NCBI RefSeq assembly: GCF_006345805.1 | Contig: NC_042998.1 | Coordinates: forward strand, 124,496,001 to 124,560,000 | DNA length: 64,000 nt | Source of the DNA: Octopus sinensis | Taxonomy: Eukaryota | Reading direction: 5' to 3' | Part shown: positions 4,321 through 62,465 of the stretch, one piece after another | How the letters are laid out: every line of letters begins with the position of its first letter | How positions within the stretch are numbered: the first letter of the stretch is position 1 | Made by a program: the position numbers and the translations under genes | The notes under the pieces: model-generated | Seen by the model: only the letters and a program-made list of their open reading frames with translations | Database searches by the model: none | What the model was told of the DNA's origin: nothing

Positions 4321-4914
4321 TTTCGTTCATTTCATAATTCTTAGTTCAACAATATGCTTATATTGGAATACTTCTCGTATATTATGTACTATTTGCAATC
4401 GCTACTATATCGATAGCTTAAATCAATGACATTCCTGCTTGGAACTATGCTCGCCACAATCATTGCGAGCAACGTACATTGTACAAATTTCAAATAGCTA
4501 TTGCTTGACGATCACCCACAGACTTCGAATGTTCAACTTTTACTTTGGCTTTCCATCTCCAACTCTAATATCTACGATAGCACCCCGACACCACCAACCA
4601 TAAATCTAAATACGTAACAAGCTTGTATTCTTTCCTTTTAGAATCGTGACAAGCTCTAATATATCACCAGTGTGGTTAAAGCTGAATTTCGAATTTTGAT
4701 AAGAGATAGCAAGACATGTCAGATGGGATTCAGTTCAGGATTGTTAGTAGAACTGACGACACACACGAACACGCAAACACACACACATACACACCATACA
4801 CATACCACATACCACCACACACATACACTACATGCACACACTAATACACACTATACAGCACGGGAAAACTAGTTGAGATTAACAGGAAAACAATGTCAGG
4901 GTCAGGTTTCTTAC

Positions 4915-5270: not shown

Positions 5271-5689
5271 TGTATGTATGTATGTGTATGTATTTATGTG
5301 CTATATGTGCGTAAATGCCTGTATATAATTATGGGTAAGCATGTAGATGGTGTGACCTTTAAAACATTCCACAATCACAATCACAAATACGTATACAGAC
5401 ACACACACGCGCACATTAATACATATGCATACATTCAGCTTATATCGGATATCTAGTGATTTACGAGCCAGTACTGCCGTGTATTTGAATTGCTTGTCTA
5501 TACATATATGTTCATGTGTATTAGTATTTGCGTGTATGTGAGTGCGCGTGTGTGTGTGCGCATGCTTGCATATATCACCGTTACAAAACAGTGATACAAT
5601 GTTTTTCACTACAAGTAAACTACAGTAAAAGAAATCCATGTCTACTGTCAGTACAGACTGACTCCTAGGTTGTTCCACTGATGTTACTA

Positions 5690-6600
5690 AAGTGATTTTA
5701 TTGTTTCCTGTTCTTTGATTTGTTTAGCCAGTTGTCGAATTGCAGACATTCTGGTGCAGAGTATTTGTGAGCATGAAAACGTTTACGGCGGATGGCTATA
5801 ATTAATAAAAGAAGAAACTGTTCTAGTAATATGTCCGTGATAATGCCGCTAGCTGAGTCAACTAAACATGGAATAATCAGATGGGCAGTCGGCACCACAC
5901 TACAACATCTCCTAGGCCAGGTTACTTTGCACTCGACAACTCAGTAGTCACATAGTTGTGTAATGGTAGCTATTGTGATGATATAAATCAATTCAGCATT
6001 TGTGTAATGCACTTTGACGAAAGAGATATCGTTTTACACTCATCTGTTCCTTTCTGTCTGCAAAGAAATGTAAATCTTTGTGACCGAAGGAGGAAGTTTA
6101 ACTATCATGTACTTAACAGTTTGACATCAGAGGAAATCACCAGTCTGTCGAATGAAACAACTTCTGATATTAATGTGATCGACTAAGTCATTTCTGCTTT
6201 AGCAATGTTATTTTATATATTTGGTCAGAAGTAAAATCCAGTAGCATGCATGAACTTTGCTGTACTTTCAGACTGATGGGATTTATGCAGCCGGTTGCCC
6301 AACTCGAATATCTCCCAAATAAAATCTGCAAAGGAAAAGAATCAGGACAGCAGCCTGAATGCTTGTAATAGAGTAGACAAGTAAAAGTACCCAAATGTTG
6401 GTATCTAACTGGGTAGATAATCATGGTGTTGTTTATGCACAATCAAGTCTTCATTTTGCTAACCTATGATCACAAGCTTTCCTGCCATGAGATACCATTT
6501 TTATATATATTGGCGGCTATTTCTAAGAAGGTTGAATATCCTTGTGGGAGCTACCCCATGGCAAAGGACTTCTTATAACGCAGCGATGATATGTCATAAG
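5690..6600 (+). mobile_element. Heavily decayed piggyBac-like transposase relic
   Basis: Fragments in the expected piggyBac order: FFDLF..ADILVQSICEHENVY, LSQLNME*SD...ARL, FDE, SSMHEL..DGIYAAG, NWVDNHGVVYAQSS, YIGG. Many stops and frameshifts; no TIRs found. Confidence 0.45.
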
Positions 6601-7895
6601 GAGGGAAAGAAACTAATTATTCCTCTTACTTTTTGTAAAGCACAGTAGCTTTCATTCCATATGTGTATCAGGAGATTACATCAGTTTTATCTAAGTCATT
6701 ATTCAAGTTACTGAAATTAAATGATTTAAACCGGAAATCAAATGTATGACTCGCTTTCTCGACGCCCCTGAGAAAAACTGAAATCCATCTTTTTTATATT
6801 AAGTTCGTGCCTTATATCATGTATAAAGCAAAATTGTATTTTATAATAATATAGAGTAAATATGTCGGAATTACGTCAATTCAATATAGACTTTATTCAA
6901 CTATTACAATAACTATATGTAATACTTTATAGTGCCATATCAAATTTCGTTATTAAGATACCGATGTGCCTATCATTTATAATGTATTTACGATAGTAGA
7001 ACGGCGTTAGCTGCAAATTTTTGTGTTAGGGGAATTTCTCTTTGAAGATTTTGTATGGAAAACGAGCATGCTTTGGATAAGGGTAGAGAAGAGTTGTCGC
7101 ACAGTGATCCTTTGACTAAATTACATCTCCTCAGTGACTAGTCTCGCCATCTGCAGCCTTTCGGCTTCGACTACAGAATGCAGGAATTTGACTTAATCCT
7201 GGCCTGTGTCCCCATAAATCATTAAATGTTTACTTTGAAAAATACGTCAAACGGAACGACTGGAGGTTTCTGTCCCTGAGGAAACAAATCTTAAACGGAA
7301 ACACCTGTGTCTGAAGGCCCTCCAGTGCTATTTGAAACATACTCTGTAGTTAAAATACAAATTTCTAAAGAAAACTTTCTTTGAAGCATAATCCTACTGC
7401 TAGCGCTTATGAATATAATATAAATGATATACATCTCGTTATTTTTTTAACAGAATACTGTTCCAAATGCATAAATGCATATATTTCTTTCGCTGTTGAT
7501 GGGGTTTATTAAAAACTATGCATAAAATCACAGTTAATGGCAATTTCGTAACCGTAGTAAATCATTAACGAATAGTAATACAGCAATACATACTAATATT
7601 GTTAGCAACATCATAACGATTTCCACAATCAACCGTTTTATCAGCAACGACGATATCGTCAGAATTTTCACATTTTCAGGCATTGTACTTTCACTTTCTA
7701 GAAGGACACATTATTACTATGATGATAATTGCAAACTGACGCTACAACAACAAAAAAACACTCTTCAATAATATGAGTAACAGAACAACCTAATTATATG
7801 AATTATGAATATGTTCATCGTGGATAACTCTCCAAAACCAGCGAACGAAATTTTCATTGTTCTTAGTATATTCTTCATAATATGAATATATTTTT

Positions 7896-8037
7896 CTTTA
7901 CTACCCACAAGGGGCTAAACACAGAGGGAACAAGCAAGGACATACAAACGGATTAAGTCGATTACATCGACCCCAGTGCGTAACTGGTACTTAATTTATC
8001 GACCCCGAAAGGATGAAAGGCAAAGTCAACTTCGGCG
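7896..8037 (-). mobile_element. SINE family 1 (tail-b), 5'-truncated
   Basis: Reverse complement of the family body plus the CCCCTTGTGGGTAGTAAAGAAA tail. Confidence 0.85.
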
Positions 8038-8162
8038 AGGTCGACTTTGCCTATCGTCCTTTCGGGTCGATAAATTACGTACCAGTTGCGTTCTGAGGTC
8101 GATCTAATCGACTGGCTCTCACCCCCAAAATTTCGGGTCTTGTGCCTAGAGTAGAAAAGAAT
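8038..8162 (+). mobile_element. SINE family 1, 5'-truncated, head-to-head with the previous copy
   Basis: GGTCGACTTTGCCTATCGTCCTTTCGGGTCGATAAATT...CTTGTGCCTAGAGTAGAAAAG. Confidence 0.85.
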
Positions 8163-8189
8163 ATGTATATATGAAGAAAGACGACAAGC

Positions 8190-8395
8190 TAACAGAAACG
8201 TTAGCACGACAGGCGAAATGCTCAGCGGCGTTTCGTCTCTTTTCACGCTCTGAGTTGAAACTCCGCCGATGTCCACTTTGTCTTTCATCCCTTTAGAGGT
8301 TCCATAAGATAAATACCAGTTGAGTATTATAGTCGATGTATTCGACATATCACCTCACACAAAATTGCTGGCCTTGGGCCAAATTTTGTAATCAA
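8190..8395 (+). mobile_element. SINE family 1 (tail-a)
   Basis: CAGAAACGTTAGCACG head through the AAATTGCTGGCCTTGGGCCAAATTTT tail. Confidence 0.8.
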
Positions 8396-8766
8396 CATTA
8401 ATATCCTGTATTAATTTTCTAAAATGATCGTGGGAAGTATCACACAGGGACTCGGATGACTAACCTTATACGCCAAAATGATAAAATAATCGAATTTAAG
8501 ATGTCATATCAAGGACAATATATTTTGCACCCTCGTACATATTATTGTATTATATAACGATTATACTTTCACTCTCCTTATCTCTTACTCTCCCAGCCTC
8601 TCCTCTGCATACCCACCTCTCTCTCTCTTTCTCTTTCTCTCTCTCTCTCTTTCTCTCTCCGTCTTTCTGCCCCTTCCTATCTTATTCCCTGATGACACAT
8701 TAGCAATAATATATTCATAGAACAATAAAAGTTTCGCGATATTTCTACAAACACAGACACACACAT

Positions 8767-8811
<45 letters not shown>

Positions 8812-8958
8812 TACGCGCGCGCGCGCTCATACGATGCCATCAGGCGACTGCACTAACACAGGCATAGCCCTACTCACAAGCAAATACACGTTTGAACACA
8901 TTCCCTGAGTAGGGACGTTATTGTGTGTACCTGTAATAAAATATGTGAATGTTTGCGC

Positions 8959-9157
8959 GCAGGCGAGGCTGTATGGTAAGAAGCTTGGTCCTTACGCACA
9001 AGGCTCTGGGTTCAGTTCCACTGCGTGGCATTTTGGGCAGGTATCTTCTACAATGGCCTTGGTCCCACCAAAGCCTTGTGAGTGGAATTGGTAGATGGAA
9101 CCTGAGTGAAACCCGTCATTTGTGTGTGTGTGTGAACATGCGTGCGTATGTGTGTGC

Positions 9158-9194
<37 letters not shown>

Positions 9195-9405
9195 TGTATT
9201 TCTGCTTGTTCATCACCAGTACTTGAGAATTGATGTTGGTGTGTTTACTTTCCATAATCTAGCAGTTCGGCAACGAGTATCAACAGAATAAGTACAAGGC
9301 TTTAAAAAAGTACTGGGGTCCATTCATCCGACTAAAAATTCTTCACGAGGTATCCCAGCATGGCCACAGTCTAATGAGTGAAATAAGTAAAACATAAAAG
9401 ATAAA
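8959..9405 (+). mobile_element. SINE family 2 (tRNA-like head, internal (TG)n, GTAAAA-type tail)
   Basis: GGCTGTATGGTAAG A-box-like and GGGTTCAGTTCC B-box-like motifs; same layout as 11382-11817. Confidence 0.8.
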
Positions 9406-9419
9406 ATAATATTTGCATA

Positions 9420-9842
9420 TTCTTTTCTACTCTAGGCACAAGGCTTGACATTTTGGAGGAGAGGACTAGTCGATTAGATCGACCCCAGCACGCAATTGGC
9501 ACTTAATCTATCGAACCCGAAAAGATGAAAGGCAAAATCGACCTCGGCGGAATTTGAACTCTGAACGAAAAGACAGAAGAACTACTGCTAAGCATTCCGC
9601 CCGGCGTGCTAACACTTTTTATTTCTTTACTGCCCACAAGGGCTACACACAGAGGAGACAAACAAGGACAGACAAACGGATTAAGTCGATTATTAAGTCG
9701 TAACTGGCACTTATTTAATCGACCCCGAAAGGATGAAAGGCAAAGTCGACCTCGGCGTAATTTGAACTCAGAACGTAACGGCAGACGAAATACCGCTAAG
9801 TATTTCGCCCGGCGTGCTAACGTTTCTACCAGCTCTCCTCCT
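9420..9842 (-). mobile_element. Two tandem SINE family 1 copies (9420-9620 tail-a type; 9620-9842 tail-b type); a third fragment at ~9995-10128
   Basis: Each contains CGACCCCGAAAGGATGAAAGGCAAAGTCGACCTCGGCG or a close variant (reverse family body). Confidence 0.85.
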
Positions 9843-10612
9843 TAGAACACGAGCATGTTATCTGAGTTATGGTAGTGCAGAATGTTATGTGGGAAAAGAA
9901 ATATGGAGTATTATGCTATAATTTTTTTATTGATTCACAAACAAAAAGTTACAATGAAAAGACTTGTACCACAAGTTGATGTTAGTTTCAATTTTTAGAA
10001 CAAAGCCAGTAATTTACCATTAAGTCAGTTAGATCAACCCCAGTGCTCAGCTGGTACGTATTTTATGACCCAGAAAAGATGAAAGGCAAATCGAGCTCGG
10101 GGGAATTTGTTCTCAGAACGTAAAAGGGGCGTATCCGTTTCGTTCTAAGAAATTTAACAAAATTTGGTTTTTGGGTTGAGATATCATTTCTGAAAATATG
10201 TCAGTGAATCATTAGATGATATTTGCAGCTACACACTTTCCTCGGTGGTATTTGAACTCATAACGTGTATCTACACTAAGTAACCGCGCCAACACCAGTT
10301 CTCAAGCGGTGGAGAGGAACAAACAGAGATACAAAGACGCATACAAATACACACGCATAAACACGCACACACAAATACACACACACACACACACTACAAG
10401 ATGCAATTTACAATCAGTAAACAGACATAAAGTCTGTTATCAATTATATTGTCGTATATCTTAAAGACATTGCCAAAAATGTTGTATATATCGAAACAAT
10501 AAAGAGTTCGATAAGTATAAACTAATTTCATCTTTAGTGCAAGAATATAATAAAATATAGTAGCATATAATGGTAATTCACTTGCAAATATACTCTTGAC
10601 ATTCACATTATG

Positions 10613-10614
<2 letters not shown>

Positions 10615-10672
<58 letters not shown>

Positions 10673-10790
10673 CATATATGTATGTCTGTATATATATATA
10701 TATAATATATATATATAATATATATATATAAATAATTTAAAGCAACATATGTATATATCTATCTGTCGATCTATATATGTACATATATAT

Positions 10791-10874
<84 letters not shown>

Positions 10875-10880
10875 ATTAAT
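10615..10880. repeat. (TA)n microsatellite; many others, e.g. 11817-11888, 27325-27386, 31045-31120, 31797-31868, 41860-41932, 46595-46797
   Basis: Direct inspection. Confidence 0.98.
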
Positions 10881-11208
10881 GTACATTTAATGTACATCTA
10901 TAAAGATAAAAGCTACTAATAGTTTCTTTCTATGAGGATACATGACAAGCCACCTGTCTTCATAGCAAGAAATTATAAGTAGCTCTTATATTTAGACAGT
11001 GTACAATCGAATGTATTCTGTCCGGACACACGCTCGGATTTTACCACACGTACTCGTAAATAAAATGGTGCATAACATTTATATAAATATATATGCGTGT
11101 GTGTGTATGTGTGTGCTTGTGTGTGTGTACCTAAGTATATATGTATATATATATATATATATTAGAGAATAAGGTGTACGTACGCCGCAATAATATATAT
11201 ATATAAAA

Positions 11209-11363
11209 GTACGAAAAGGACAAGAACGCAAAACATTCAAGATTTATCTGCCGATATTGCGAGGATGATCCGGTTCTTGACTGAAGATTAGAAGCTTCGA
11301 ATGACCCGTCCGTGTTTTTTGTATCGTCTATTTGAATGTTTTGCGTTCTTGTCCCATTTTGTA
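11209..11363. mobile_element. 155-bp fold-back element with ~27-bp terminal inverted repeats, inside (TA)n
   Basis: AAAAGGACAAGAACGCAAAACATTCAA ... TTGAATGTTTTGCGTTCTTGTCCCATTTT. Confidence 0.7.
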
Positions 11364-11381
11364 TTTATATATATATATATA

Positions 11382-11543
11382 GGCGCAGGAGTGGCTGTGT
11401 GGTAAGTAGCTTGCTAACCAACCACATGGTTCTGGGTTCAATCCCACTGCGTGGCATCTTGGGCAAGTGTCTTTTGCTATAGCCCCGGGCCGACCAATGC
11501 CTTGTGAGTGGATTTGGTAGACGGAAACTGAAAGAAGCCTGTC

Positions 11544-11577
<34 letters not shown>

Positions 11578-11815
11578 GTATGTGTGTGTGTGTTTGTGTG
11601 TCTGTGTTTGTCCCCTAGCATTGCTTGACAACCGATGCTGGTGTGTGTTTACGTCCCCGTCACTTAGCGGTTCGGCAAAAGAGACCGATATAATAAGTAC
11701 GGGGCTTACAAAAAATAAGTCTCGGGGTCGATTTGCTCGACTAAAGGCGGTGCTCCAGCATGACCGCAGTCAAATGACTGAAACAAGTAAAAGAGTAAAA
11801 GAGTAAGAGTAAGAG

Positions 11816-11817
<2 letters not shown>
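11382..11817 (+). mobile_element. SINE family 2, full length
   Basis: tRNA-like head (GTGGCTGTGTGGTAAG, GGGTTCAATCCC), CTTGGGCAAGTGTC, internal (TA)n(TG)n, GGTGCTCCAGCATGACCGCAGTC and (GTAAAAGA)n tail. Confidence 0.92.
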
Positions 11818-11890
<73 letters not shown>

Positions 11891-12326
11891 GTATTGCATA
11901 TTTGAGAATATTTCCCCTGTCAATTATCAATTCTTTATCTTTACCTCAAAACCTTTCTTCTCTGCTCTGCAAGTGAATCACACTTCACTTCATTTAGATA
12001 CATACGCAAACATTCACATGTACCTGCGTACAAACATTTATACGCACTTACACACACACATACACACACACATATATATATGTTCTGGTAGAGCTATGAC
12101 AGCAGAAACGACGTAAATATTTTGAATACCACTATTGATATGAATATGTTAAAGCATTGGTTTTATCCTTTATGTTTTAAGTCTATGTGGTCATCTGACG
12201 AGAACGGTTTCTTTCAGATGATATAATGTTTTCATTAATCAATGAAGAAGTCGCTTGAAACGGCCCTGATGAATTTACACCTGTACATAAACTTAGATAT
12301 GTTTCGACCAAAGATTGGTCCAAGCC

Positions 12327-12378
<52 letters not shown>

Positions 12379-12589
12379 TGTTGTGTCTGGGGAGAGTCAT
12401 TTTCTTTTTGTGCCTTATAATGTAACACACTCACCGGTAAAATTTCCACTTATTTCTTATTTTTATTTTCCTAAAATTTTCGTGGCGTCTTGCAACCTTT
12501 TCAATAGTCTTGACTTTGTCCGTTATTTACACTGCGTTCCCTTTTGTTTGTTTGTGAGCTATATATATATATAGTAAATTTTATTCTGC

Positions 12590-12836
12590 AACTTGTTTCA
12601 GCGGTCGTGCTGGAGCACCGCCATGAAGGGTTTTTGTCGAACAAATCTAGCCCAGGGCTTATATATTAAACCTAGTACTTATAATATTGCTTTTTTGGGG
12701 GGTGGGGGCCGAACTACAAAGTTACGAGAATGTAGACACACTAACATCGGTTGTGAAGCAGTGATTGGACAAACACAAACACAAGGACACACACAGGCAT
12801 ATACATGTATACATATACACGACGGGCTTCTTTCAG
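12590..12836 (-). mobile_element. SINE family 2, 3' half
   Basis: CTTGTTTCAGCGGTCGTGCTGGAGCACCGCC ... GACGGGCTTCTTTCAG. Confidence 0.8.
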
Positions 12837-12897
12837 AAGAAGAATACTGATGATGATGATGATGATGATGATGACGACAACAATAATAATGATGATA

Positions 12898-12943
<46 letters not shown>

Positions 12944-14775
12944 TAATAATAATAATGAATAAATAAATAAATAAATAAATAAATAAATTTTAAAAATCTG
13001 TATGTGAAATGTAGTAACTCTTTCAACTTTTTAGTACATAAAAATTCATAATACCCGAATTTCCAGTTTCCAGTACTGTAATTATAGGCTTTTATTTATG
13101 ATTAATGAAACGTCAAACAAGTAAGCTAGGAAAAAAGCCAATGGGAATTCTAATTGGTATATATTTTACTAAAAGTCATACGATGACTCGCTGACATAGT
13201 TTCAAAAATTGTACGTTGATCCAGAAGTCAAATTTTTACGAAATTTCTTGAAACGAAACGGATATATCCTCTTGTTAAATGCCACGCTAAAATATTAGTG
13301 AACAATTTCTATCTGCACAGTGAAGGGGATATTGGAACTGGAACTGTACAGGTCAAAATGTGGAATCTTAAACATATTGCATCAGAAGATGTCATCTGAA
13401 TTTAAATAATATCAATTTTCTGACAGGAAAAAGTAGAGAAAATACTAAAGTGAAGCCAATATTTTGCTCCGATACCTTTATAGCTATGTGGTTAAATTTT
13501 GAGGGTCATTTTCAGGACAGCATAGCACCCTTTTATGCGCATTTCTAATTGAGATCGTACTTAAAGGAATTATCTTGAAACTGAAGAAGACATTATACTT
13601 TGAAGAAAGGTTTTCTTTTTAGTTAAGCTTTATATAATTCAGAGTGTAAAGAGGATTATTATTTTTTTTTTTTTTGAGAGCCTTGGTTGTTATGCTTAGT
13701 GACAATATTGAGGCATTCTTCATTTCGTTTCCTTATTTGACAAACATCCATGAATAAGAAAATGTGCGATCAAATTTCAATACACGTGAAATATTGGTTT
13801 CAAAATTTGTCTCAATCTCGGGGGAGGTTCACATCCGATTGAGTAAGGAACAGGCTTTAAAAACATGAGTACTGGGTCGATATATTCGACTAAATAAAAC
13901 GCTATGTCCCAGCATGGCCGCTGTCAAATGACTGAAAAAATAAAAGATAAAAGATAAAACTACAGCGTTTGCTCAAATTTGACTTTTTTCGTCATAGCTC
14001 ATCCATGTTTGAAAATATTTTATCCTATTTTTTACCCAGTAATTTTCTATTAAAATGTCTCAGAATGAAGTAGAGAGCTGGATTTATTCAGTGAATTTAA
14101 TCGCATATAATTCGTTCAAGATTTAGGTTATCTAGATGGGCTAGAATTGAGCATGAAGTAGTAAATGTTGACCTTACGTATACTATTCACTCACTGTCCT
14201 AATGAAAGATATACACGTATTTCTCTAACACGTAATTATACTAGTAGTAAAGTCTAATTGTAAATTAAACAATAGATCCATCTTTGTCAAAACACACCCA
14301 TACTCATTTCACTTACTATATCAACTGTTTGCTTTATAAATTGCATAGTAGAGCTCATATGATGTATATCTCCGTTTACTTTTAGTGTAACATTATATTT
14401 TAACCAATTAAGTCAATGACACCCAGACTCAAACTAACACGTCATACAAGATAGTCATTACAAATTCATCACGTCTTTCCGTTTACATATGTGCGTATGT
14501 GTACATTCGTGTATACATATGTGTGTGTGCGCGTACGCGGGCACGAACGCGTGTGAGCGTGTGCGTATTTACACGCACACGATCACACAGACATACATGA
14601 GTACACTGATTTATCTATATATATATATATATATTTATTTATACGAACACGAACAAAGATATACTCACACACACGCACACATATATACGCACACACATAC
14701 ATAAAAATGTGGTCTCATACATATACATATGTATGATCTTGATTGATGTATAATTATACATATATGCATATGTGT

Positions 14776-14776
<1 letters not shown>

Positions 14777-14857
<81 letters not shown>
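14777..14857. repeat. (GATA)n microsatellite; another at ~39130-39260
   Basis: Direct inspection. Confidence 0.98.
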
Positions 14858-15104
14858 GCATGTATAGACATTTATGTATGTAGTTATTTAGTAATCTTCC
14901 TTGGATTGAGTTCTTTGTTCGACTTTCTCATCCAATATTTATATGTGTGTGTGTGTGTCTGTCCGTATCTGTGTGTGTATGCGTGCGTGTGTCTGTGTAT
15001 CTGTGTCTGCATGCGTGTGTGTATATATGTATATGCATGTATACCATTCACGCTGACATATAAATAGGTATAATTTAATTCTGCAGAGAACAAAATTGAA
15101 AACA

Positions 15105-15330
15105 GCGACCTAGTAGAAACGTTAGCACGCCGGGCAAAATGCTTAGCGGTATTTCGTCTGTCGCTGCGTTCTGAGTTCAAATTCCGCCGAGGTCGACTTT
15201 GCCTTTCATCCTTTCGGGGTCGATAAATTAAGTACCAGTTACGCATTGGGGTCGATGTAATCGATTTACTCCGTTTGTCTGTCCTCGTTTGTCCCCTCTA
15301 TGTTTAGCCCCTTGTGGGCAATAAAGAAAA
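15105..15330 (+). mobile_element. SINE family 1 (tail-b), full length
   Basis: Head GAAACGTTAGCACGCCGGGCAAAATGC, body, and tail TTTGTCCCCTCTATGTTTAGCCCCTTGTGGGCAATAAAGAAA. Confidence 0.92.
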
Positions 15331-16110
15331 AGGTATAATTTTGTTCCACAGTTTTTCTACAAATCTATTCAATTCTCTAATTCTTCCCCACCTCTCTCCC
15401 TTACATATGCATCCGTGTACAAATACACACTCACAAATATATATGCATCTCTGTATGTTATGTAATTATATGTATGCATGTTTTTTTTCCCTGTATATAA
15501 TGGATTTATCGCATTATGCATATGCTGCACATTTCCAAAACCGAGTCTGCAGGCAGAAAATGGACATACACGTATGCCGATATTGATTGCGTAGATAAGA
15601 TCTGTCGACATCGAAAAGAAGATAACTACACAATTTTGACTTGGTTGGGATATCATATATAAATATTGAATTATTTGATTCAATCAGTAAAGTATTTTAG
15701 GCATAATCTGCTGATGTCAACAAAAATATCGGAATCTGCTAATATTCTAATATTATATCCAATCTACAGATATCGACTTAGTTGGACACAACGTGAAGGT
15801 GTGAATCGCTGTGGTAAAATATGTATATATCATTCGGTGACTTATAAATTATATGTTGTAAACAGGCTGTATGTCAAAGTTTTGTAGATGTCGACAGGTC
15901 AAAGTCATATAGCAGAAGAAAATTAAAACCGACTTCGAGAAAATTGGTGATGATCTACGTCGGTAAAAACTATACAATAACATTGGTGACTTTGAATAAG
16001 CTTGTTTTGCAGAGAATAATTTTGGATCGAATTCTTCTGAGACTAAAGAAATATTTTAAGAGAAACATTTACTATTAAAAATAAAAAATGACTGGATGTC
16101 GGTAATGATC

Positions 16111-49645: not shown

Positions 49646-50165
49646 TTATTATTATTATTATTTTATGTTTGACTTTTGCTTTACATTTGTACAAGTTGGC
49701 TCCAAGTCTCACCCAGAGACCTCATGAGACAACAAGTTGGAAGTTCATGTTGGTGTTATGCTTAGGGTGCCATATATTTGGTTTTGTACATAGTGTTGTT
49801 CTAGAGAATGTTTAAGAAGCCACAAGAAAATTATGTTTGTTTTAAAACTTGAGATTACATAGAAAGTATTTTGCTTAGGATATGAGCAGTTCCCATGAGC
49901 ACTATCTTTTGAATTTCTGCTATTTTGGGGTTTCCTGGCATCTGAGCTAGGTAGCAATCAGCCCCTTTTGCTATCATTCCCAGGGCACCTATGACAACAG
50001 GTATTGTTTTAGTCTTCAGGTTCCACATTTTGCTCATTTCTATTTCAAGATCTTTATATTTGCTCAGTTTTTGGTAGGTCGTGACAAATACGTTTATATC
50101 GATTGAGACAGTCATATCAATGAGGAGGCATGATTTTTTGAGGAGGCATGATATTTGTCTGAAGT
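49570..50165 (-). mobile_element. R4/Dong-like LINE, 5'-truncated 3' end B with 3' UTR and (TAA)n tail
   Basis: CLLIDMTVS..KLSKYKDLEIEMSKMWNLKTKTIPVVIGALG...LMGTAHILSKILSM*. Tail at 49570-49665; trinucleotide array 50167-50345 upstream. Confidence 0.9.
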
Positions 50166-52670
50166 TTATTATTATTATCATCATTATCATCATCATCATT
50201 ATTATCATCATTATCATCATCATCATTATTATCATCATCATCATCATCATCATCATCATTATTATTATTATTATCATTACTACTACTACTACTACTACTA
50301 CTACCACTACTACTACTACTTGTAGTATTATTATTATTACTACTACTAATAGTAATAATTACAATAAAATAGTAACATTACTATTACTGCAACAACAGCA
50401 AAAGCAACAGAGTAGCTTTGGTTTGAATATCGATAAAGATACTGACAATCACTTCTATTGATGTTCATTATAATCTATGAAATAGTAAGGAGAAATAACG
50501 AAGGAAAGCTTGTGTTAACGGAGACTTACACATGTTAGTTACTAACATGTTAAAACTATATTGCTCTTTCACTTAGTACAAGATTTCTGTGACTAGTGTT
50601 AGCATTATTTACCGAATTGTACGCCGAAAAATCATTACAGTAACGAATCACAAGTAAAATTGATGTGATAAAATTAATTACCAGCTACGATTTTTAAGAA
50701 CCAATTTGGAAAAGAAAACATTACGACCAAGTGGACTCGAATAATTTATGGATTGTTTTTATGACGTTAAATTAGGTATTATAAAATATTTTTACTATTT
50801 AATTGTACAGTATTGTCTAAAATATAATTCGTTTGTCGCTAAGTACTAACAGGATAGGCTACCTTATGAATGTGCATCTGCGTGTGCCACTTTGATTTCA
50901 AGAAAAGTAACTTCATGAAAACAATTCATTTAACAGCTAAGAATTAAGTGTGATATGATATAGTACCACTAATTTGTTGCCAAAATTGGCAGAGCCGTCA
51001 GAATTCTTGTGGTAATTATTTTTGTCCGGCTGAGTTAAAATACTACCGAGATCAATATGGATTTCCATTCATTCTCGATACATAAGTAATGTACAATTCC
51101 TATAATGTAACGACTGTATCCTGTACTGAAGTGAGATAACGGTTAGGAATTTAACATAATATTATCGTAGAATCTATAAGCGGAAATTAGATTAAGAGAA
51201 ATCATGTGACTGGAGTCTCATGAAAGTTTCTGTTACTTAAACAATTGTTACTAAATTACAGAACATTCCATCGACATGAAAATTAAAAGCATTTCTTTGA
51301 ACAGAACAAATGGCAATTCTAAATGGAACTAGATAATAAAAGAAGAGAAAGCAGTGCCAACACCAAGCAATGTACAAAGTTTGTGGTGGAGGAGGATTGT
51401 GAAACGGTATAGGAAGGATCACATCATTTGAATAGACAATGGCAATCAGTAGTAAAAGTCCTAAAAGTATTCCAAGTATTACAGAACAATTTATTTAATT
51501 GGAAATCTAAAATACCAAAGTGCTAGCTATCTCAATAAAATATATTGCTGGTGCACGCTAAGATATTTACAAATAAAAGAGTCGTGCGAAACAGCTCACT
51601 TTCTCACAAAAGAAAAACAAAAATGTCTTGACTTCCAAAACTAAATTGACATAAAATTCTCTTAAACTTCAGGCCAATCCCAATATTTAAAATATACAAA
51701 GTAGTAATAATAATAATTTTACAGTAAAGGATAAATGTCTATTTTAGAAGGCATCAACAGTTGAAGGCTGGTATGAATGTAAGTAGAAGTTGTCGATTAC
51801 CAGAGCCCCGAAAACTATAACAGAAAAAGGAATCAGACCAATGTTAGGCTAGTGTATGACGCAAGAATTTCTTTTATTACAATTATTTTGGTAGCGATAT
51901 CGTACATGTCATAATAAATCGAAAATAGCCGTAACAATTAAGCAAAAAGAGTGGATTTTAAAAACGTTACGAATACCCGACTGAACATATTCACTCTTTC
52001 TGCCCTGCTGTCTGGTATTATTACATTTAATTAAATATCTATTTGGAGTTAATGCGGATGTCTGTCATATTCCATATAGAGTTCCGTGTAAGTATGGATA
52101 TTTGTATGAAATTCTATATGGAAAAGTATGCCACTGCAATGTTCAAATTCAAAGTTAACGAAAAGCACTAGTATCATTTTCGTCAAAGAAATAAACAGAT
52201 AAAGATAGGAGAATTTGGCGAGACTAAATTAAGATTTCAGATGCTTACTCTTGAATTAACTAAACAGAATACGGCATTCATAAATGCAAAATAATTTTAA
52301 AAGAGATATTATAAGCGTATTAGTGTAATACTGAAAACTTAGCTGAATCCCATCAAATTGATCCAATAACTATGTATATTAATATATGACAAGTCTGTTT
52401 CTTTTAAATTACATGTACATACCAATCGATGGGTCTATATACTGATTTTATCCAACCAACTTCATTTACAAGGTATGAGTCAATCATCTGCCCAAGATGC
52501 CAGGTAATAATGGCTAAACCATTAACTTAACAATTTATTCATTATGTATATATACATATGTATACATAATGCACACAAACTCACACACTCACGCACACAT
52601 ATATGTACACACGCGCACATGTGTATATATATATCTATATACACAGCACAATATCATTTTGTATATATTA

Positions 52671-53646: not shown

Positions 53647-53784
53647 AATCTTTATTAAATATATTCAAGGATAATATTATATACTGAATTTATATTGAGT
53701 CCTCAATTGTATCAAATTATTAATACTATTAAATTATTTATATATTTAATACGAGCGATATATACATATATGTTTTTTTAAATA

Positions 53785-54230
53785 ATATTATTAATAATAT
53801 TACTAACATTAGGAAATCGATATCAAAATTCCTCAGAAAGATATACACATATGAAAAACAATTGTTGTATTAAAAATATATAAATGAATAAATATAAATA
53901 TGTATAAAAATATATGTAAGTATTATAAGTATAAATATATATTGTATATGACAGTTTAAAAGTTTTGAATTAATTATTTAAAGCATCTTACAATCGTTTC
54001 ACAGAAGAATTGTCCCTATAATGAAATCCTATATTGATAAGCATTTATAGACAACGCTTCTGCTCTTCAGAGATATAAAATTTGAATTCTGTATAACATG
54101 TCGAATGGTAGCTTTTTAAAAAAAATTGAAGTAAAACTATAAAATGGTTTGTTTGAAAGATAAATTAAAAATTTTTTAATTACTACTTTTGATGAAAATC
54201 TTTAAATCCATATATACTTCCTTGGTTATT
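53785..54230 (+). mobile_element. Decayed GIY-YIG unit with ~195-bp leader (inverted relative to 58596-59200)
   Basis: The leader matches the reverse complement of 59005-59200. It is followed by broken QKNCPYN..ILISIYR..LYNMSNGSFLKK (C-P-x-N-G / IY / YIG-like order). Confidence 0.55.
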
Positions 54231-54532
54231 CTTCTTCAATAATCCGTAATATTCATATGTAAAATCCGTTATATTATCTTGTATTCCAAATGTAGTTCAT
54301 ATAGTTACTTTAGAAATATGAAATTTGTATATACTTTAGTATGAGACTCTTAAAATTCGTATGTCTTCTTGGTAATTCCTCCGTAGCAACCCATAATAAT
54401 TTTGTCTTGGTAATTCCTCTATAGCAATCCATAATACTTTTGTATAAAATTCATTATATTATCCAGTAATCCAAATATAGTTCATAATACAAAATCAAAT
54501 TATATTTTAAATTATATGTGAGTTGTAAAATT

Positions 54533-56214
54533 GATTTTTTATTATCCACAAGGGATTATACATAGATGGGACAATACAAACAATACAAACATAAACTCGG
54601 GAAACTTAAAATACAAAAAGAGGATGAATTAAGACGAAGAAATTTTTAAAAATCGAATGAAATATGAAAGATATAATAATGAAGCGCAATGCCCACTCGA
54701 CCCCCGAAGTCGAGTGGTTACATTTCGACAGTTTTTTTTTCCTATTTTCATAAATGAATTACAATAGAATTTTTTAAACAAGTTTTTCTTTTTTCATAAA
54801 TGAATATTACAAAAGAATTTTCGACAGTTTTTTCCCCTTTTTTATAAATGAATTTCCAACATAATGCATTTTTCCTTTCAGATTCTCATATCCTATTATG
54901 GGAGGTGTGTATTCCAGTAACCGACACCAACTGTCCAGTTTTATGTACTTTTTGAAGACCTCCTCGAATTTGACGTAACTCTCCGTATGTACCAAAACAC
55001 CGACATCATCTACGTCAAATTTGTCTCCCAGCTTTACTCTTATCATCCCCTTCATTTTCGATCTCTTTTCTCTAATTCATAAGAACTTTTGTATGTTATA
55101 AATGATCCATAATATTTATACGGATCATCTTCTGTTTCTTCAAAAATCCTCTTACCTTTGTTTTCTTCTGAATGTTCCCTCATCCTCATCTCTCTCTACT
55201 TTGGGGGCTAATAACTCCTTTGCTCTCCTCTTTTGATTAATTCATTTCACTCTTCTTGTTGTCTTTCTTGCTGTCTTTCTCTTTCTTGACTAATTGTTCT
55301 GCTTCTGTTTGTACTTTCTCCTGCATCTGTTCTTTCTTTTCCACTTTCTTTTGTTCCTTTTCCGTTGTCTCTTTGCTTTGTGTAAATTTATATAAGAGAC
55401 ACTCTGTCCTTATGTGTTCTCGTACTCCGCATAGATAGAAATTAGGTCTCCTTCCCTCGACTACAACGTTTAACGTCATTTCATTCTCAACCTCGATCTG
55501 GAAGTGGATTCTCTCGATGTCTTCAGCTGTGGCAACAAGCCACATTTCGACTCCGAATCCTCGCCAGTTCAACGTATTTGTTTCACCTACTGGACCTAGT
55601 TCGGGATCGTCTACTGTAGACGCCAGTTTCGCTGCAACCAGCCATTCCGTTTTTATTTCCAGCGGCACTGTGGAAATTTTGACCCTGACGCTTCGTCTTC
55701 CTCTGTAGGTGGGCAATAATGCAATCCTTTCCGTTTTTAGGATGGTGGTGGAGTGCGAGGCCGCCTCTTCCTTTGTGGCAAACCGTACCGAATTTCTACC
55801 CCTTGCCAACGTAGGTTGTCTTTTCCATCACTTCTCCAAGGCACTCTTCAATTTTTTCCTCTGTTATTCATCCAATTTTCTTTTTCCACCTTCTTTCTAT
55901 ACACAACCGTTTTGAGGTTCTTTTCCTCTGTTGCCTCTGTCGGAGAGATCAGCTTAATGCTTTCTCCCTCCCTCCCCATGTACTGTTCACGTCTCTTAAC
56001 TCCTTCCTTATTAATCAGGACATTCCTTGTTACCAGTGACGCGACACCTCTCGCCGCAGCGACCTTCGCGTAGCTCTCTATTACGGAGAGACTACGTCTC
56101 TCTCTTTCACTAAAAATGGGGAAAAAGAACAGCAAAGCAGCAGCAAGCAGCACGCGCGAAGCGTTTTATCAAAAACTTTTTCCCAATTCACCAAATAGTA
56201 CAACCAATTTCAAC
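54533..56214 (-). mobile_element. ORF1-only non-LTR element (half-L1-like) of Tx1/L1 type
   Basis: Frameshifted ORF1 from ~56000 to 54807: NSVRFATKEEA, RVKISTVP, knuckle (N)FYLCGVREHIRTEC, K/E-rich block. Then a ~270-nt 3' UTR and the shared tail; no APE or RT; bounded by target duplications. Confidence 0.75.
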
Positions 56215-56230
56215 GTGTAGTTGTAAAATT

Positions 56231-58277
56231 GATTTTTTATAACCCACAAGGGGCCAACGAAGAGGGGACAATACAATCTGATTTGGGGGTCAGATGAGCG
56301 AATGATTATACAAAACAAAATGACATTAAGAAGTTTACAAAAAATAAGAAAATAAAATAAAATAGAATTGTTGGACAGACCGGAAGACATTATGGATGGA
56401 GTGGGGGGGGCGTGTTTAATTCGGACCCACGAGCCCCGCATCGCCAATGATAGCCGAATTGCATCGAAAGGAAATCAGGCGGGTCAATTTTTACTATAGA
56501 CTCAGTCGATAGCTGTACACTTCCTGCACTTGACAACAGTTGTTCAGCATAAACCCACACATCTGACACCTCCGAACATTGAACAATAGCATGCGGGGCG
56601 GTTTCCCTATCCTGTTCGCATCTTGGACAGGTCGAAGTGCCACAGCCACCATGCCTTGTGAGTTTGTCCCGAACAGGGAAGGCTTCTCTGTAACACTACC
56701 ATGCCAGAGACTTCTGAAAGTTGTCCAGGGTCTTCGGCCCGAATGTACGTTGGAACAGACTGGCCAGCTGATTATCGTCGAGACCTAGGGTTTATCCTAA
56801 GGTATCGTCACATTCCGCCTCTAAGAGCCCTCTATAAAAGAATGCGGTAGAACCCCCACCGCAGGCATTGCCCGAACGACGGAATAGCAGGAGAGCCTTG
56901 ATACACTTTGTAAGCCATGTACCTAGCTTCGATCTTCGATAGAACCAGGATTCCCGTCCACTTAAACTAGTGAACCTGGGAAACATCCGTTTCGCCAGCG
57001 GAGACCACATCCAGGTAAAGCCACAGATGCCTCAACCTCAGCGCACGTCTGCGCATCAACAGCCAAGGCATCCGTAGCCCACACCCTTTAACGATTGTTG
57101 GCAGCAAGTAGAGCGTTTCACAAGAGGTTTCGAGCCCTTCTACAAAACGTGGAATAGATGTCTTTCCAATTTGTTCAACCACAAATCAAGGCAAGGAACG
57201 ACAGTTAGGCGGTAGGTGATGACTGATGCGATGAACACATTGGCTACCTCCGCCCTCCCTTTCAGGGATAGCCACCGCCAAGACCACGCCTTGATTGTGG
57301 TTCACCCTGCTCGATACCTTGGCCCAGTTCTTCTCTATTTGGAGGTCTGGTCCAAACCAAACTCCAAGCAACTTAATCGGACCCTCCGTCCAACGTCCTA
57401 CGACGCTGTCAGAAGGCATCGACTTGCCTCTCCAGGTGCCGAGCTGCAAGCCGACTGACGTTTCACGATTAACCTTTGCTCCTGCTACCGTCTCGTAAAC
57501 CTTAATGGCCTTGCCTACCCTCTGTAGGTGATCCATGTCGATGTCATCCGCGTAAGCTGAAACCGACTTTCCACAACCTGGCTGTCTCGGGACGCCGCTC
57601 AATTTTCGCAGTAATGGCTCAAGAGCCATCACGTACAAAAGCGGGAAGAGCGGACACTCTTGACGAACCGAGCGTTTGATGTTGAACGCCCTTGATAAGA
57701 AGCTGTTCACCCGAACTATCGAGTCGACGTTGTCATAAATCTGAATGGTCCACCTCAGGAAGCCAAAACCCAGGTCGAACTGTGCCAGAACGGACACCAG
57801 GTCGCGATGGTCAACCCTATCAAATGCCTTAGATTGGTCGAAATGGACCAGTGCCCCACCCTTGCCAGAATCACTATTAAACCCATCTAAATGTACCGCA
57901 TAAGATTGAGATTATCCTGGATGGTTCTGCCGCGAACGGCACATGCCTGTGCCTCCCCGATCAGACCATCCACGACATGCGCCAATCTTTTCGATAACAC
58001 TTTGGCCAAATTTTTTAACTCTGCGCTCAGCAGAGTGATGGGCAGAAAATTATCAACAGACTCCCCTTTGTCCGGGTCTTTCTGACAAGCGTCACCACTC
58101 CCCGGTGCACAGATCTGGGAATAAACCCGTTCTGCTGCCAGTTCGCGTAGACATTCGCCAGCAGGTGCCCGAACAAGTCTGGCATATTCTTATACAACTC
58201 ATAGGGTAGACCGTCCAGTCCCGGCGCCTTACTCGCGCCGCAGTCTGACATAGCCTCAATCACCTCCTCGGGCCAAA
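56231..58277 (-). mobile_element. 5'-truncated Tx1/L1-clade LINE (RT plus C-terminal zinc finger)
   Basis: KAPGLDGLPYELY, PITLLSAELK, DQSKAFDRVDH, SVRQECPLFPLLY, SAYADDI, IKLLGVWF and CPRCEQDRETAPHAIVQC. Confidence 0.95.
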
Positions 58278-58595
58278 GTGTAGTTGTAAAATTATTAACT
58301 GGTCAAAATATTTTTTATTTCTTTTATATTTTTATTTCTGTAATTGGAAGATGCCAATTAAAATTTTAGATTTTTAAATTTAATGCAATTATAACTGTCC
58401 ATTTGTTATTGATTAGATGTACCCGGGTTCTAATTCCAAGAATATCTATTCAATCTTTATTTAATGTATAATTTATAATTTGTCTTGTAAATTTACTTAT
58501 AGTTCAATAATTCTAATCAGTTTATCTATTTATCTATTTGTAAGTATCACCCTATATTTTAATATCACAAAAATGGAAGAATCTATATATATTTA

Positions 58596-62455: not shown

Positions 62456-62465
62456 CTAGTATTTA

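What the first reader, a model, noticed from the sequence alone, without database searches (positions are those of the whole stretch)
15281..15330. SINE family 1 tail-b matches the 3' end of the Tx1-like LINE and the ORF1-only element
Seen: SINE TTTGTCCCCTCTATGTTTAGCCCCTTGTGGGCAATAAAGAAA (also reversed at ~7900-7935 and ~9622-9665). RT element end ATTGTCCCCTCTTCGTTGGCCCCTTGTGGGTTATAAAAAAT (reverse of ~56232-56272). ORF1-only end ATTGTCCCATCTATGTATAATCCCTTGTGGATAATAAAAAAT (reverse of ~54534-54575). Known: SINEs borrow the 3' tail of the LINE that mobilises them; L1-clade tail donors are uncommon because mammalian L1 needs only poly(A). Inference: a three-tier system (autonomous Tx1-like LINE, ORF1-only derivative, abundant SINE) sharing one stringent recognition tail.
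Basis: partly seen in the sequence, partly recalled or inferred. Interest (0 to 1): 0.75.

Follow-up and report, generated by a model that had tools for sequence, protein, structure and literature searches.

The report
Octopus SINE borrows L1-type LINE tail
A short parasitic repeat (SINE) in this octopus sequence ends in the same roughly 42-base tail, with a small conserved RNA hairpin, as an L1-type LINE retrotransposon of octopods. This is the classic sign that the LINE copies the SINE; the principle is known, but this pairing was not described in the papers I could search.

Summary
A ~42-nt tail (TTGTCCCCTCT..GT..CCCTTGTGG..ATAAA) ends three SINE copies and two LINE-derived elements on the minus strand. 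A covariance model finds exactly these five copies in the window.

The tail belongs to the LINE lineage and is not a captured SINE end. It closes the 3'UTR of independent LINE copies in Octopus sinensis, in a near-intact full-length element of Argonauta hians, and in a metagenome relative. In Argonauta a SINE with a different head carries the same tail.

The tail contains a 4-bp hairpin with a CUUGU loop. One stem pair occurs as G:C, C:G, A:U and U:A.

Both window LINE elements end without poly(A), directly against target-site duplications. This fits stringent tail recognition.

The LINE belongs to the L1 superclade (APE endonuclease, RT, zf-RVT; best solved-structure match human L1 ORF2p). 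Tx1 subclade membership could not be tested.

The "ORF1-only" element shares ORF1 homology and the tail and has no ORF2 remnant. It is one decayed copy, so a third tier is not shown.

Unexpectedly, both LINE-derived elements sit in the same 16-bp target (AATTTTACAACTACAC, present three times).

Verdict: a new member of a known kind, of moderate interest.

The parts
15077..15330 (+). SINE copy with tail-b. The tail is 15289-15330. The hairpin is G15307-C15310 / G15316-C15319 with loop CTTGT at 15311-15315.
   Evidence: Flanked by the 11-bp direct repeat AGGTATAATTT (15066-15076 and 15331-15341), read.
7891..8037 (-). 5'-truncated SINE copy with tail-b (tail about 7936-7891), abutting an inverted SINE fragment.
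   Evidence: 92% identity to the 15k copy.
9622..9829 (-). SINE copy with tail-b (tail about 9665-9620), followed head-to-tail by a 5'-truncated SINE with a different tail.
   Evidence: 88% identity.
56231..58277 (-). 5'-truncated, frameshifted L1-type LINE copy. It has RT motifs, a zf-RVT CCHC domain and a 3'UTR, and ends in the tail (56272-56231) at ...ATAAAAAATC with no poly(A).
   Evidence: RVT_1 6e-9, zf-RVT 5e-7.; 52-62% aa identity to Argonauta ORF2.
58278..58293 (-). Copy 1 of the 16-bp target AATTTTACAACTACAC (5' duplication of the RT element).
56215..56230 (-). Copy 2 of the 16-bp target, lying between the RT element tail and the start of the ORF1 element.
54533..56214 (-). ORF1-only element, 1.68 kb. 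It has a 5' region and a LINE-type ORF1 (N-terminal piece 56165-55851 in one frame, 55827-55240 in another, first Cys of the CCHC knuckle lost). About 0.5 kb with 47-bp tandem repeats follows, then a LINE-like 3'UTR and the tail (54575-54533). No ORF2 remnant.
   Evidence: O. bimaculoides A0A0L8GL55, 63% identity; 34% aa identity to Argonauta LINE ORF1, 2e-19..
54518..54532 (-). Copy 3 of the 16-bp target (AATTTTACAACT-CAC, one base missing).

Best explanation
The window is octopus DNA. The closest named relatives of its repeat proteins come from Octopus bimaculoides, O. sinensis and Argonauta.

It holds an L1-superclade LINE lineage whose RNA ends in a conserved ~45-nt tail. The tail has a box UCUAUGU, a 4-bp hairpin capped by a CUUGU pentaloop, and then AAUAAA(A)GAAAU(C).

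The most likely mechanism is the stringent type of LINE reverse transcription. The LINE ORF2 protein recognises this tail, mainly the hairpin, on its own RNA. It starts target-primed reverse transcription at the end of the tail rather than on poly(A).

One subfamily of the abundant octopus SINE has acquired the same tail. Its RNA is therefore accepted in trans and copied into the genome.

The ORF2-less, ORF1-bearing element with the same tail would be mobilised the same way, if it was inserted in that form.

Shown here: tail homology, its terminal position against target-site duplications, its antiquity in the LINE lineage, covariation in the hairpin, and absence of poly(A).

Inferred: recognition by ORF2p, trans-mobilisation, and the direction of transfer from LINE to SINE.
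For: 1. Tail shared by 3 SINE and 2 LINE-derived ends in the window.
2. The tail ends exactly at target-site duplications:
   - 16 bp for both LINE-derived elements.
   - 7 bp (ATTGGAT) for the O. sinensis copy.
   - 11 bp for the SINE at 15 kb.
3. Independent LINE copies carry the tail after the ORF2 stop and 3'UTR:
   - O. sinensis L017, 11025-11070.
   - A. hians L018, 11145-11190, in an element with intact ORF1, APE endonuclease, RT and zf-RVT.
   - Metagenome contig L001, 1973-2018.
4. In Argonauta a SINE with a different head carries the tail at more than 20 sites in 21 kb. The tail is thus the constant part and the heads vary.
5. RNAalifold predicts the 4-bp hairpin without prompting.
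6. 92% of cells are paired against 51% or less when the partner is slid. One pair occurs as GC 11, CG 3, AU 1, UA 1. 0 of 500 shuffles reach the count of double changes.
7. The ORF1 of the ORF1-only element is homologous to the ORF1 of the full-length Argonauta LINE.
8. Established knowledge: SINEs share 3' tails with stringent partner LINEs (Ohshima et al. 1996; Kajikawa and Okada 2002, as cited in PMC4824008 and PMC3472496).
Against: - No functional test was possible.
- The hairpin is only 4 bp and weak (consensus -3.7 kcal/mol).
- Single-sequence folds are not more stable than shuffles for most copies.
- The lower stem suggested by folding has no compensatory change.
- Covariation rests on one pair, and many Argonauta rows are near-identical copies.
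- The two LINE-derived copies in the window are dead, and their tails are only about 72-74% identical to the SINE tail over 46 nt. They are therefore not the donors.
- The genome-wide abundance and age of tail-b SINEs and of this LINE could not be measured.
- The SINE head is not recognised as tRNA by ARAGORN or Rfam.
Confidence: 0.8

Rival explanations
1. The direction is the reverse. The tail arose in the SINE, and the two LINE-derived copies in the window (or the LINE family) picked up a SINE end by template switching or by a SINE inserting at their 3' end.
For: Only two decayed LINE-derived copies exist in the window. Head-to-tail SINE/LINE junctions are common here.
Against: - The tail follows a continuous, alignable LINE 3'UTR in four LINE copies from at least three sources.
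- No SINE body sequence lies upstream of it.
- It is present in LINEs only 50-69% identical in protein.
- Octopus and Argonauta SINEs with different heads share it.
Confidence: 0.04
2. The tail is shared by descent but is no longer what drives mobilisation. Tail-b SINEs would be copied by another LINE clade that is abundant in octopus (RTE, CR1, Dong-R4), or in a relaxed way through the A-rich end.
For: RTE, CR1 and Dong-R4 are the most active LINEs reported in O. vulgaris (PMC13282606). The tail ends in an A-rich stretch containing AATAAA. No assay was done.
Against: - None of the insertions has a poly(A) tract between tail and duplication.
- The loop and the two loop-proximal pairs are invariant, or nearly so, across LINEs and SINEs of two genera, while flanking bases drift. 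This indicates selection on the tail in both partners.
- The duplications of 7-16 bp fit L1-type integration.
Confidence: 0.1
3. The 'ORF1-only element' is not a separate non-autonomous family. It is a single full-length or partly truncated LINE insertion that lost ORF2 by internal deletion after it inserted.
For: Only one copy was found. Its ORF1 is frameshifted and decayed. A deletion after insertion would leave the flanking duplications intact. A Logan contig with a related ORF1 (L023) gave no information on what follows ORF1.
Against: - No trace of endonuclease or RT sequence remains on either side of a putative deletion.
- About 0.5 kb of unrelated sequence with 47-bp tandem repeats lies between ORF1 and the 3'UTR.
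- ORF1-bearing non-autonomous LINEs are a known kind (HAL1, HeT-A, Ag-Sponge; PMC5786205).
Confidence: 0.45
4. The similarity is chance resemblance between short AT-rich sequences.
For: None beyond the short length.
Against: 0 matches in 100 shuffles. BLAST E-values of 1.9e-4 to 7.8e-9. Covariance-model E-values of 1e-8 to 1e-10.
Confidence: 0.005

Closest known systems
Stringent-type SINE/LINE pairs with a common 3' tail (eel UnaSINE1/UnaL2; tortoise Pol III SINE/CR1; zebrafish ZfL2 elements)
   Same: The SINE 3' end is homologous to the LINE 3' end. A small conserved stem-loop lies near the end. There is no dependence on a long poly(A). Some relatives end in short terminal repeats, here (ATT)n in Argonauta and L001.
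   Different: The partner here belongs to the L1 superclade, not to L2, CR1 or RTE. The hairpin is only 4 bp with a CUUGU loop, and an AAUAAA box lies immediately 3' of it. No assay exists.
L1-clade LINEs with stringent tails: maize/sorghum LINE1-1_ZM with ZmSINE2/3, and Chlamydomonas L1-1_CR with SINEX-3_CR (Ohshima 2012, PMC3472496)
   Same: An L1-clade LINE shares a conserved, structured 3' end with SINEs, and compensatory changes occur in the stem. The case is rare within the clade (3 of 58 known pairs).
   Different: Those are plant and algal lineages that end in poly(A). This one is an animal (cephalopod) lineage without poly(A), and it is linked to a SINE that makes up a large share of octopus genomes.
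Tx1 clade LINEs and their SINE partners (Tx1-Mar and SINEU in crocodilians; Kojima 2015, PMC4494074)
   Same: An L1-related LINE with ORF1 and APE/RT/CCHC ORF2 is proposed to mobilise SINEs. There is a hint of target preference: the same 16-bp site was used twice here.
   Different: The SINEU/Tx1-Mar link rests on shared target preference and shared 5' heads, not on a shared 3' tail. Here the link is the tail. The SINE and an O. sinensis LINE copy sit in unrelated targets. Tx1 clade membership of the octopus LINE was not tested.
ORF1-bearing non-autonomous LINEs (HAL1 of the L1 clade, HeT-A, Ag-Sponge; Kojima 2018, PMC5786205)
   Same: The element has LINE 5' and 3' ends and an ORF1 homologous to that of the autonomous partner, but no ORF2.
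   Different: Only one decayed copy was seen, so family status is unproven.

Membership tests
SINE/LINE pair with common 3' tail (stringent type) | The SINE 3' end is homologous to the 3' end of a LINE in the same genome. | tested here: met
   83-88% identity over 41-42 nt; covariance-model E of 1e-8 or lower.
SINE/LINE pair with common 3' tail (stringent type) | The shared segment is the extreme 3' end of the LINE, adjacent to the target-site duplication, without a poly(A) tract. | tested here: met
SINE/LINE pair with common 3' tail (stringent type) | The tail is a stable feature of the LINE lineage, independent of the SINE. | tested here: met
   present in O. sinensis, A. hians and metagenome LINEs. 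SINEs with different heads share it.
SINE/LINE pair with common 3' tail (stringent type) | A conserved stem-loop supported by compensatory changes. | tested here: met
   a 4-bp stem, one pair with four Watson-Crick types, 0/500 shuffles. The stem is small and the lower-stem extension is unsupported.
SINE/LINE pair with common 3' tail (stringent type) | The LINE mobilises the SINE in trans, and this requires the tail. | not testable with these tools
   Needs a retrotransposition assay.
SINE/LINE pair with common 3' tail (stringent type) | The SINE has a pol III (tRNA-type) head with A and B boxes. | tested here: inconclusive
   ARAGORN and Rfam find no tRNA. A B-box-like GAGTTCAAATTCC is visible in the sequence.
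L1 superclade LINE | APE-type endonuclease, RT and a C-terminal CCHC (zf-RVT) domain in ORF2. | tested here: met
   - Window copy: RVT_1 and zf-RVT; the endonuclease is lost by 5' truncation.
- Argonauta relative: Exo_endo_phos, RVT_1 and zf-RVT.
- Best solved-structure match is human L1 ORF2p, 2e-53 over endonuclease plus RT, against R2 at 4e-24.
Tx1 clade | The RT groups with Tx1 elements in a phylogeny (RTclass1-type test). | not testable with these tools
   No Tx1 reference sequences were available. The only support is indirect: L1-Tx1 is the only L1-type group reported in octopus repeat annotations (PMC13282606, PMC8967140).
Tx1 clade | Target-sequence specificity of insertion. | tested here: inconclusive
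   Two independent elements used the same 16-bp site. The O. sinensis LINE copy (ATTGGAT) and the SINE (AGGTATAATTT) lie in unrelated targets.
ORF1-only non-autonomous LINE (HAL1-like) | ORF1 is homologous to the partner LINE's ORF1, ORF2 is absent, and the 3' end is the same. | tested here: met
ORF1-only non-autonomous LINE (HAL1-like) | Multiple copies share the same internal junction, showing that the element was amplified in the ORF2-less form. | not tested
   Only one copy is in the window and no octopus genome could be scanned. L023 was uninformative.

The most novel reading that the evidence does not exclude
A single L1/Tx1-type LINE superfamily, recognised by a CUUGU-loop hairpin at its 3' end, may be the engine behind the octopod-specific SINE explosion. 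SINEs make up about 12% of the O. vulgaris genome.

On this reading, different SINE subfamilies (tail-b, and the tails ending GGCCTTGTGCC...) and different SINE heads in Octopus and Argonauta have repeatedly swapped onto tails of sister LINE lineages.

The LINE would also have a real target preference. This is suggested by two independent insertions into one 16-bp site, and by head-to-tail arrays next to existing tails.
Probability: 0.3. Interest if true: 0.65.

Novelty: new member of a known kind. Interest (0 to 1): 0.45.

Why it matters
SINEs are the largest repeat class in Octopus genomes. They have been linked to the octopod-specific genome expansion (PMC8967140, PMC13282606). None of the papers I could search names the LINE that copies them.

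A shared, covarying tail points to an L1-type lineage as the partner of at least one SINE subfamily. L1-clade LINEs with a specific tail are rare (three SINEs with L1 tails among 58 SINE/LINE pairs in Ohshima 2012). An animal example therefore bears on whether stringent recognition is ancestral in this clade.

The hairpin gives a small, precise target for mutational tests.

Tried and rejected
- **Viral contig scan for the tail pattern.** No matches.
- **Four short contigs with close ORF2 C-termini (L019-L022).** Three end before the tail. L020 has only a degraded version (CCTCTTGTGGCCAATC).
- **O. bimaculoides ORF1 relative P0121.** It has no contig on record.
- **Logan contig L023.** It holds a related ORF1 but says nothing about an ORF1-only family.
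- **Rfam and ARAGORN on the SINE heads.** No tRNA. The Rfam hits are microRNA models matching microsatellites, which I take as false positives.
- **Tandem duplication of one LINE insertion as the source of the triple 16-mer.** Rejected. The two tails differ by about 16-21%, and the two 3'UTRs are otherwise unalignable. They therefore come from different source elements.
- **One insertion with template switching as the source of the pair.** Rejected, because a copy of the target lies between the two elements.
- **Strict site specificity.** Rejected, because the O. sinensis copy and the SINE lie in other targets.
- **Extended lower stem (UCU.UGUU with AAUA.AGA).** It can pair, but no compensatory change supports it.
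- **L003.** A distant LINE locus of unknown organism has CGGCCTTGTGCCAAA three times in 9.7 kb. I could not show that this is the LINE's own end.

Full report
**1. The observation**

- The SINE at 15077-15330 (+) ends in TTGTCCCCTCTATGTTTAGCCCCTTGTGGGCAATAAAGAAAA.
- Two more SINE copies on the minus strand, 8037-7891 and 9829-9622, end the same way.
- On the minus strand a reverse-transcriptase-bearing element ends at 56272-56231 in ATTGTCCCCTCTTCGTTGGCCCCTTGTGGGTTATAAAAAATC.
- An ORF1-bearing element ends at 54575-54533 in ATTGTCCCATCTATGTATAATCCCTTGTGGATAATAAAAAATC.

The similarity is well beyond chance.

- BLASTN of the whole SINE against the window picks up both LINE-derived tails, 83% over 41 nt, E = 1.9e-4 each.
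- A degenerate pattern has no match in 100 shuffles.
- A covariance model built later from 17 tails finds exactly these five sites in the 64 kb and nothing else.

**2. Anatomy of the LINE-derived elements**

The RT element runs 58277 to 56231 on the minus strand.

- It is 5'-truncated inside the RT domain and is broken by several frameshifts and stops.
- Its pieces match Pfam RVT_1 (6e-9) and zf-RVT (5e-7).
- It is flanked by a perfect 16-bp direct repeat, AATTTTACAACTACAC, at 58293-58278 and 56230-56215.
- The tail therefore ends exactly at a target-site duplication, with no poly(A).

The ORF1 element runs 56214 to 54533.

- It starts immediately after that second repeat.
- It ends in the same ...AAAAAATC and is followed by a third copy of the repeat (54532-54518, one base missing).
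- The 10-mer TTTTACAACT occurs exactly at these three places in the window and nowhere else.

The two tails differ at about 16-21% of positions. The two 3'UTRs are otherwise barely alignable. The two elements therefore come from different source copies.

This excludes a tandem duplication of one insertion. The copy of the target between the elements excludes a single insertion with template switching. Two independent insertions used the same 16-bp site.

**3. What the LINE is**

The stitched RT has hundreds of relatives.

- The closest are two metagenome proteins, P0024 and P0045, at 58-61% identity.
- A search with the C-terminal half of P0024 found annotated proteins in Octopus sinensis (P0129) and Argonauta hians (P0127).

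The Argonauta locus L018 holds a near-intact full-length element.

- ORF1 is 5558-7477 (639 aa), with a CCHC knuckle.
- ORF2 is in two pieces: 7468-9099 (Exo_endo_phos, 5e-11) and 9191-10969 (RVT_1 2e-18, zf-RVT 6e-8).
- A 220-nt 3'UTR follows.

A 1096-aa Argonauta ORF2 of the same cluster (P0137) aligns with human L1 ORF2p across endonuclease and RT at 2e-53, against 4e-24 for R2.

The element is therefore an L1-superclade LINE. Whether it falls in the Tx1 clade could not be tested, because no Tx1 reference sequences were available. Indirectly, L1-Tx1 is the only L1-type group reported in octopus repeat annotations (PMC13282606 and PMC8967140).

**4. The tail belongs to the LINE lineage**

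Independent LINE copies carry the tail at the end of a continuous 3'UTR.

- **O. sinensis L017:** ...TTGTCCCCCTCTATGTTTGGGCCCTTGTGGCTAATAAAGAA. A 7-bp duplication, ATTGGAT, flanks this 5'-truncated copy.
- **A. hians L018:** ...CGTCCCCTCTATGTTTTTGCCCTTGTGGCTAATAAAAGAAATA(ATT)5.
- **A second Argonauta LINE-type end:** at 4804-4849, followed by (ATT)n.
- **Metagenome contig L001:** ...GGGCCCTTGTGGCCAATAAAAGAAATC(ATT)n, 270 nt after the ORF2 stop.

The four LINE 3'UTRs align over the last 70-130 nt.

In Argonauta a SINE with a different head (GGCCGACAACAGCTCAATTGGTAGAGCG...) carries the same tail. It occurs at more than 20 sites in 21 kb, partly in head-to-tail arrays.

The tail is the constant part and the SINE heads are the variable part. 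The direction of transfer is therefore LINE to SINE.

**5. Structure of the tail**

RNAalifold on 19 tails predicts one hairpin: a 4-bp stem closing a CUUGU loop, immediately 5' of AAUAAA.

Counting pairs on that structure gives the following.

- 92% of cells are paired, against 51% or less when the 3' partner is slid by 1-3 columns.
- The two loop-proximal pairs are C:G in all but one sequence.
- The third pair occurs as G:C (11), C:G (3), A:U (1) and U:A (1).
- The fourth pair occurs as G:U, G:C or A:U.
- No shuffle out of 500 reaches the observed number of double changes.

Some cautions apply.

- The stem is short and weak.
- Many Argonauta rows are near-identical.
- Single-sequence folds are mostly no better than shuffles.
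- A lower stem pairing the conserved UCUAUGUU box with AAUAAAGA can form in 87% of cells, but no compensatory change supports it.

**6. The ORF1-only element**

- Its ORF1 is homologous to the ORF1 of the full-length Argonauta LINE (34% over 138 aa, 2e-19).
- It is also homologous to an O. bimaculoides protein, A0A0L8GL55 (63% identity).
- Its last 130 nt or so resemble the LINE 3'UTR.
- No endonuclease or RT remnant is detectable, even at E = 10.

This fits a known kind, the ORF1-bearing non-autonomous LINEs such as HAL1, HeT-A and Ag-Sponge (PMC5786205).

However, this is a single copy. Its ORF1 is frameshifted (N-terminal part in another frame, 56165-55851) and has lost the first Cys of the knuckle. 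A deletion after insertion would leave the same flanks. The 'third tier' is possible but not shown.

**7. Mechanism**

The best-supported reading is the stringent SINE/LINE partnership.

- The LINE ORF2 protein recognises the tail, with the CUUGU hairpin as the most likely determinant.
- It starts target-primed reverse transcription at the very end of the tail.
- SINE RNA that carries the same tail is accepted in trans.

The evidence is indirect.

- The tail sits at the terminal position, and none of the insertions has poly(A).
- Duplications of 7-16 bp flank both partners.
- The loop is conserved and the stem covaries in LINEs and SINEs of two genera.

The AAUAAA box may also serve as the LINE's polyadenylation signal; this is inference. 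The (ATT)n run after the tail in Argonauta and L001 resembles the short terminal repeats of other stringent LINEs; this is also inference.

**8. Comparison with what is known**

Shared SINE/LINE tails are textbook knowledge (Ohshima et al. 1996; Kajikawa and Okada 2002).

Within the L1 clade they are rare. Ohshima 2012 found three SINEs with L1 tails among 58 pairs, all in plants or algae, also with a covarying stem-loop.

Tx1-type LINEs have been proposed to mobilise SINEU in crocodilians, but on the basis of shared target preference and heads, not tails.

The octopus repeat papers I could search report abundant SINEs and L1-Tx1 elements but do not name a partner LINE.

I therefore rate this as a new member of a known kind. 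Repbase could not be consulted, so the pairing may already be recorded there.

**9. Wider context in the window**

A body-motif search finds 12 SINE copies in the window, and only 3 carry tail-b. The others end in different tails:

- ...CCCCCAAAATTTCGGGTCTTGTGCCTAGAGTAGAAAAGAAT
- ...CTGGCCTTGTGCCAAAATTTGAAA..AATATT

These again contain a short stem around a CTTGT loop. This suggests repeated tail swapping among sister LINE lineages. No LINE with those tails was found in the data to hand. L003 is only a lead.

**10. Verdict**

- The SINE/LINE tail partnership is strongly supported (confidence 0.8).
- 'Tx1-like' and 'three-tier' are only partly supported.
- The double use of one 16-bp target is a real, unexplained extra. 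It hints at target preference, but other copies lie in unrelated sites.
- Interest is moderate (0.45).

Noticed in passing
window 58293-58278, 56230-56215, 54532-54518 (minus strand): The same 16-bp target AATTTTACAACTACAC flanks two independent LINE-derived insertions in tandem. This means repeated use of one site. It hints at target preference or at a preference for inserting beside an existing tail, but it remains unexplained.
   Followed up: partly
window 53782-53982 (+) and 59211-59006 (-): A 206-bp inverted repeat (89% identity) brackets the LINE pair. With the two insertions removed, the repeat arms would enclose a unit of about 1.7 kb, possibly a DNA transposon that served as the target. 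No other copy was found in the window or in the fetched loci.
   Followed up: partly
window 58985-58596 (-): An intact 129-146 codon ORF in AT-rich DNA has a borderline Pfam GIY-YIG match (1.2e-4; motif VYIGSS...R...H). It lies just inside the left inverted repeat. It may be a Penelope-like or other GIY-YIG remnant.
   Followed up: partly
window 2312, 8136, about 8390, about 9440, about 28000, about 48000, about 48720: Other subfamilies of the same SINE end in different tails (GGGTCTTGTGCCTAGAGTAGAAAAGAAT, or GGCCTTGTGCCAAAATTTGAAA). These also contain a short stem around a CTTGT loop. One copy ends in (ATT)n.
   Followed up: partly
L003 242, 6392, 6807: A contig of unknown organism carries a distant relative of the LINE. 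It has CCCCTCCCCCATTTTTCGGCCTTGTGCCAAATTTTTCTCATT three times in 9.7 kb, once 630 nt after the ORF2 stop. This resembles the second octopus SINE tail type.
   Followed up: no
L018 4897-5360 and many other sites: Argonauta hians has a roughly 155-nt SINE with a different head from the octopus SINE but the same LINE tail. It is very dense (more than 20 tails in 21 kb) and forms head-to-tail arrays.
   Followed up: partly
window 7891-8111: A 5'-truncated tail-b SINE abuts an inverted SINE fragment, forming an inverted pair with a junction near 8030.
   Followed up: no
window 62924-63526 (+); inverted repeats 62464-62502 and 63771-63733: A mariner-type transposase fragment (Pfam Transposase_1, 2.3e-24) lies between 39-bp inverted repeats.
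   Followed up: partly
window 49855-50307 (-): A 150-codon ORF. Its C-terminal half (KYKDLEIEMSKMWNLKTKTIPVVIGALGMI...) looks like the conserved end of another retroelement protein. It has no Pfam match, and its N-terminal half is translated microsatellite.
   Followed up: no
window 10600-15070: Rfam matches below threshold to mir-297, mir-1277, mir-466 and similar families all fall on (TG)n and (TA)n-type microsatellites. They are almost certainly false positives.
   Followed up: no
window 15077-15103: The SINE at 15 kb has about 27 extra bases (AATTCTGCAGAGAACAAAATTGAAAAC) between its 5' duplication and the point where other copies begin. These may be a 5' extension of the source transcript or untemplated filler.
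   Followed up: no
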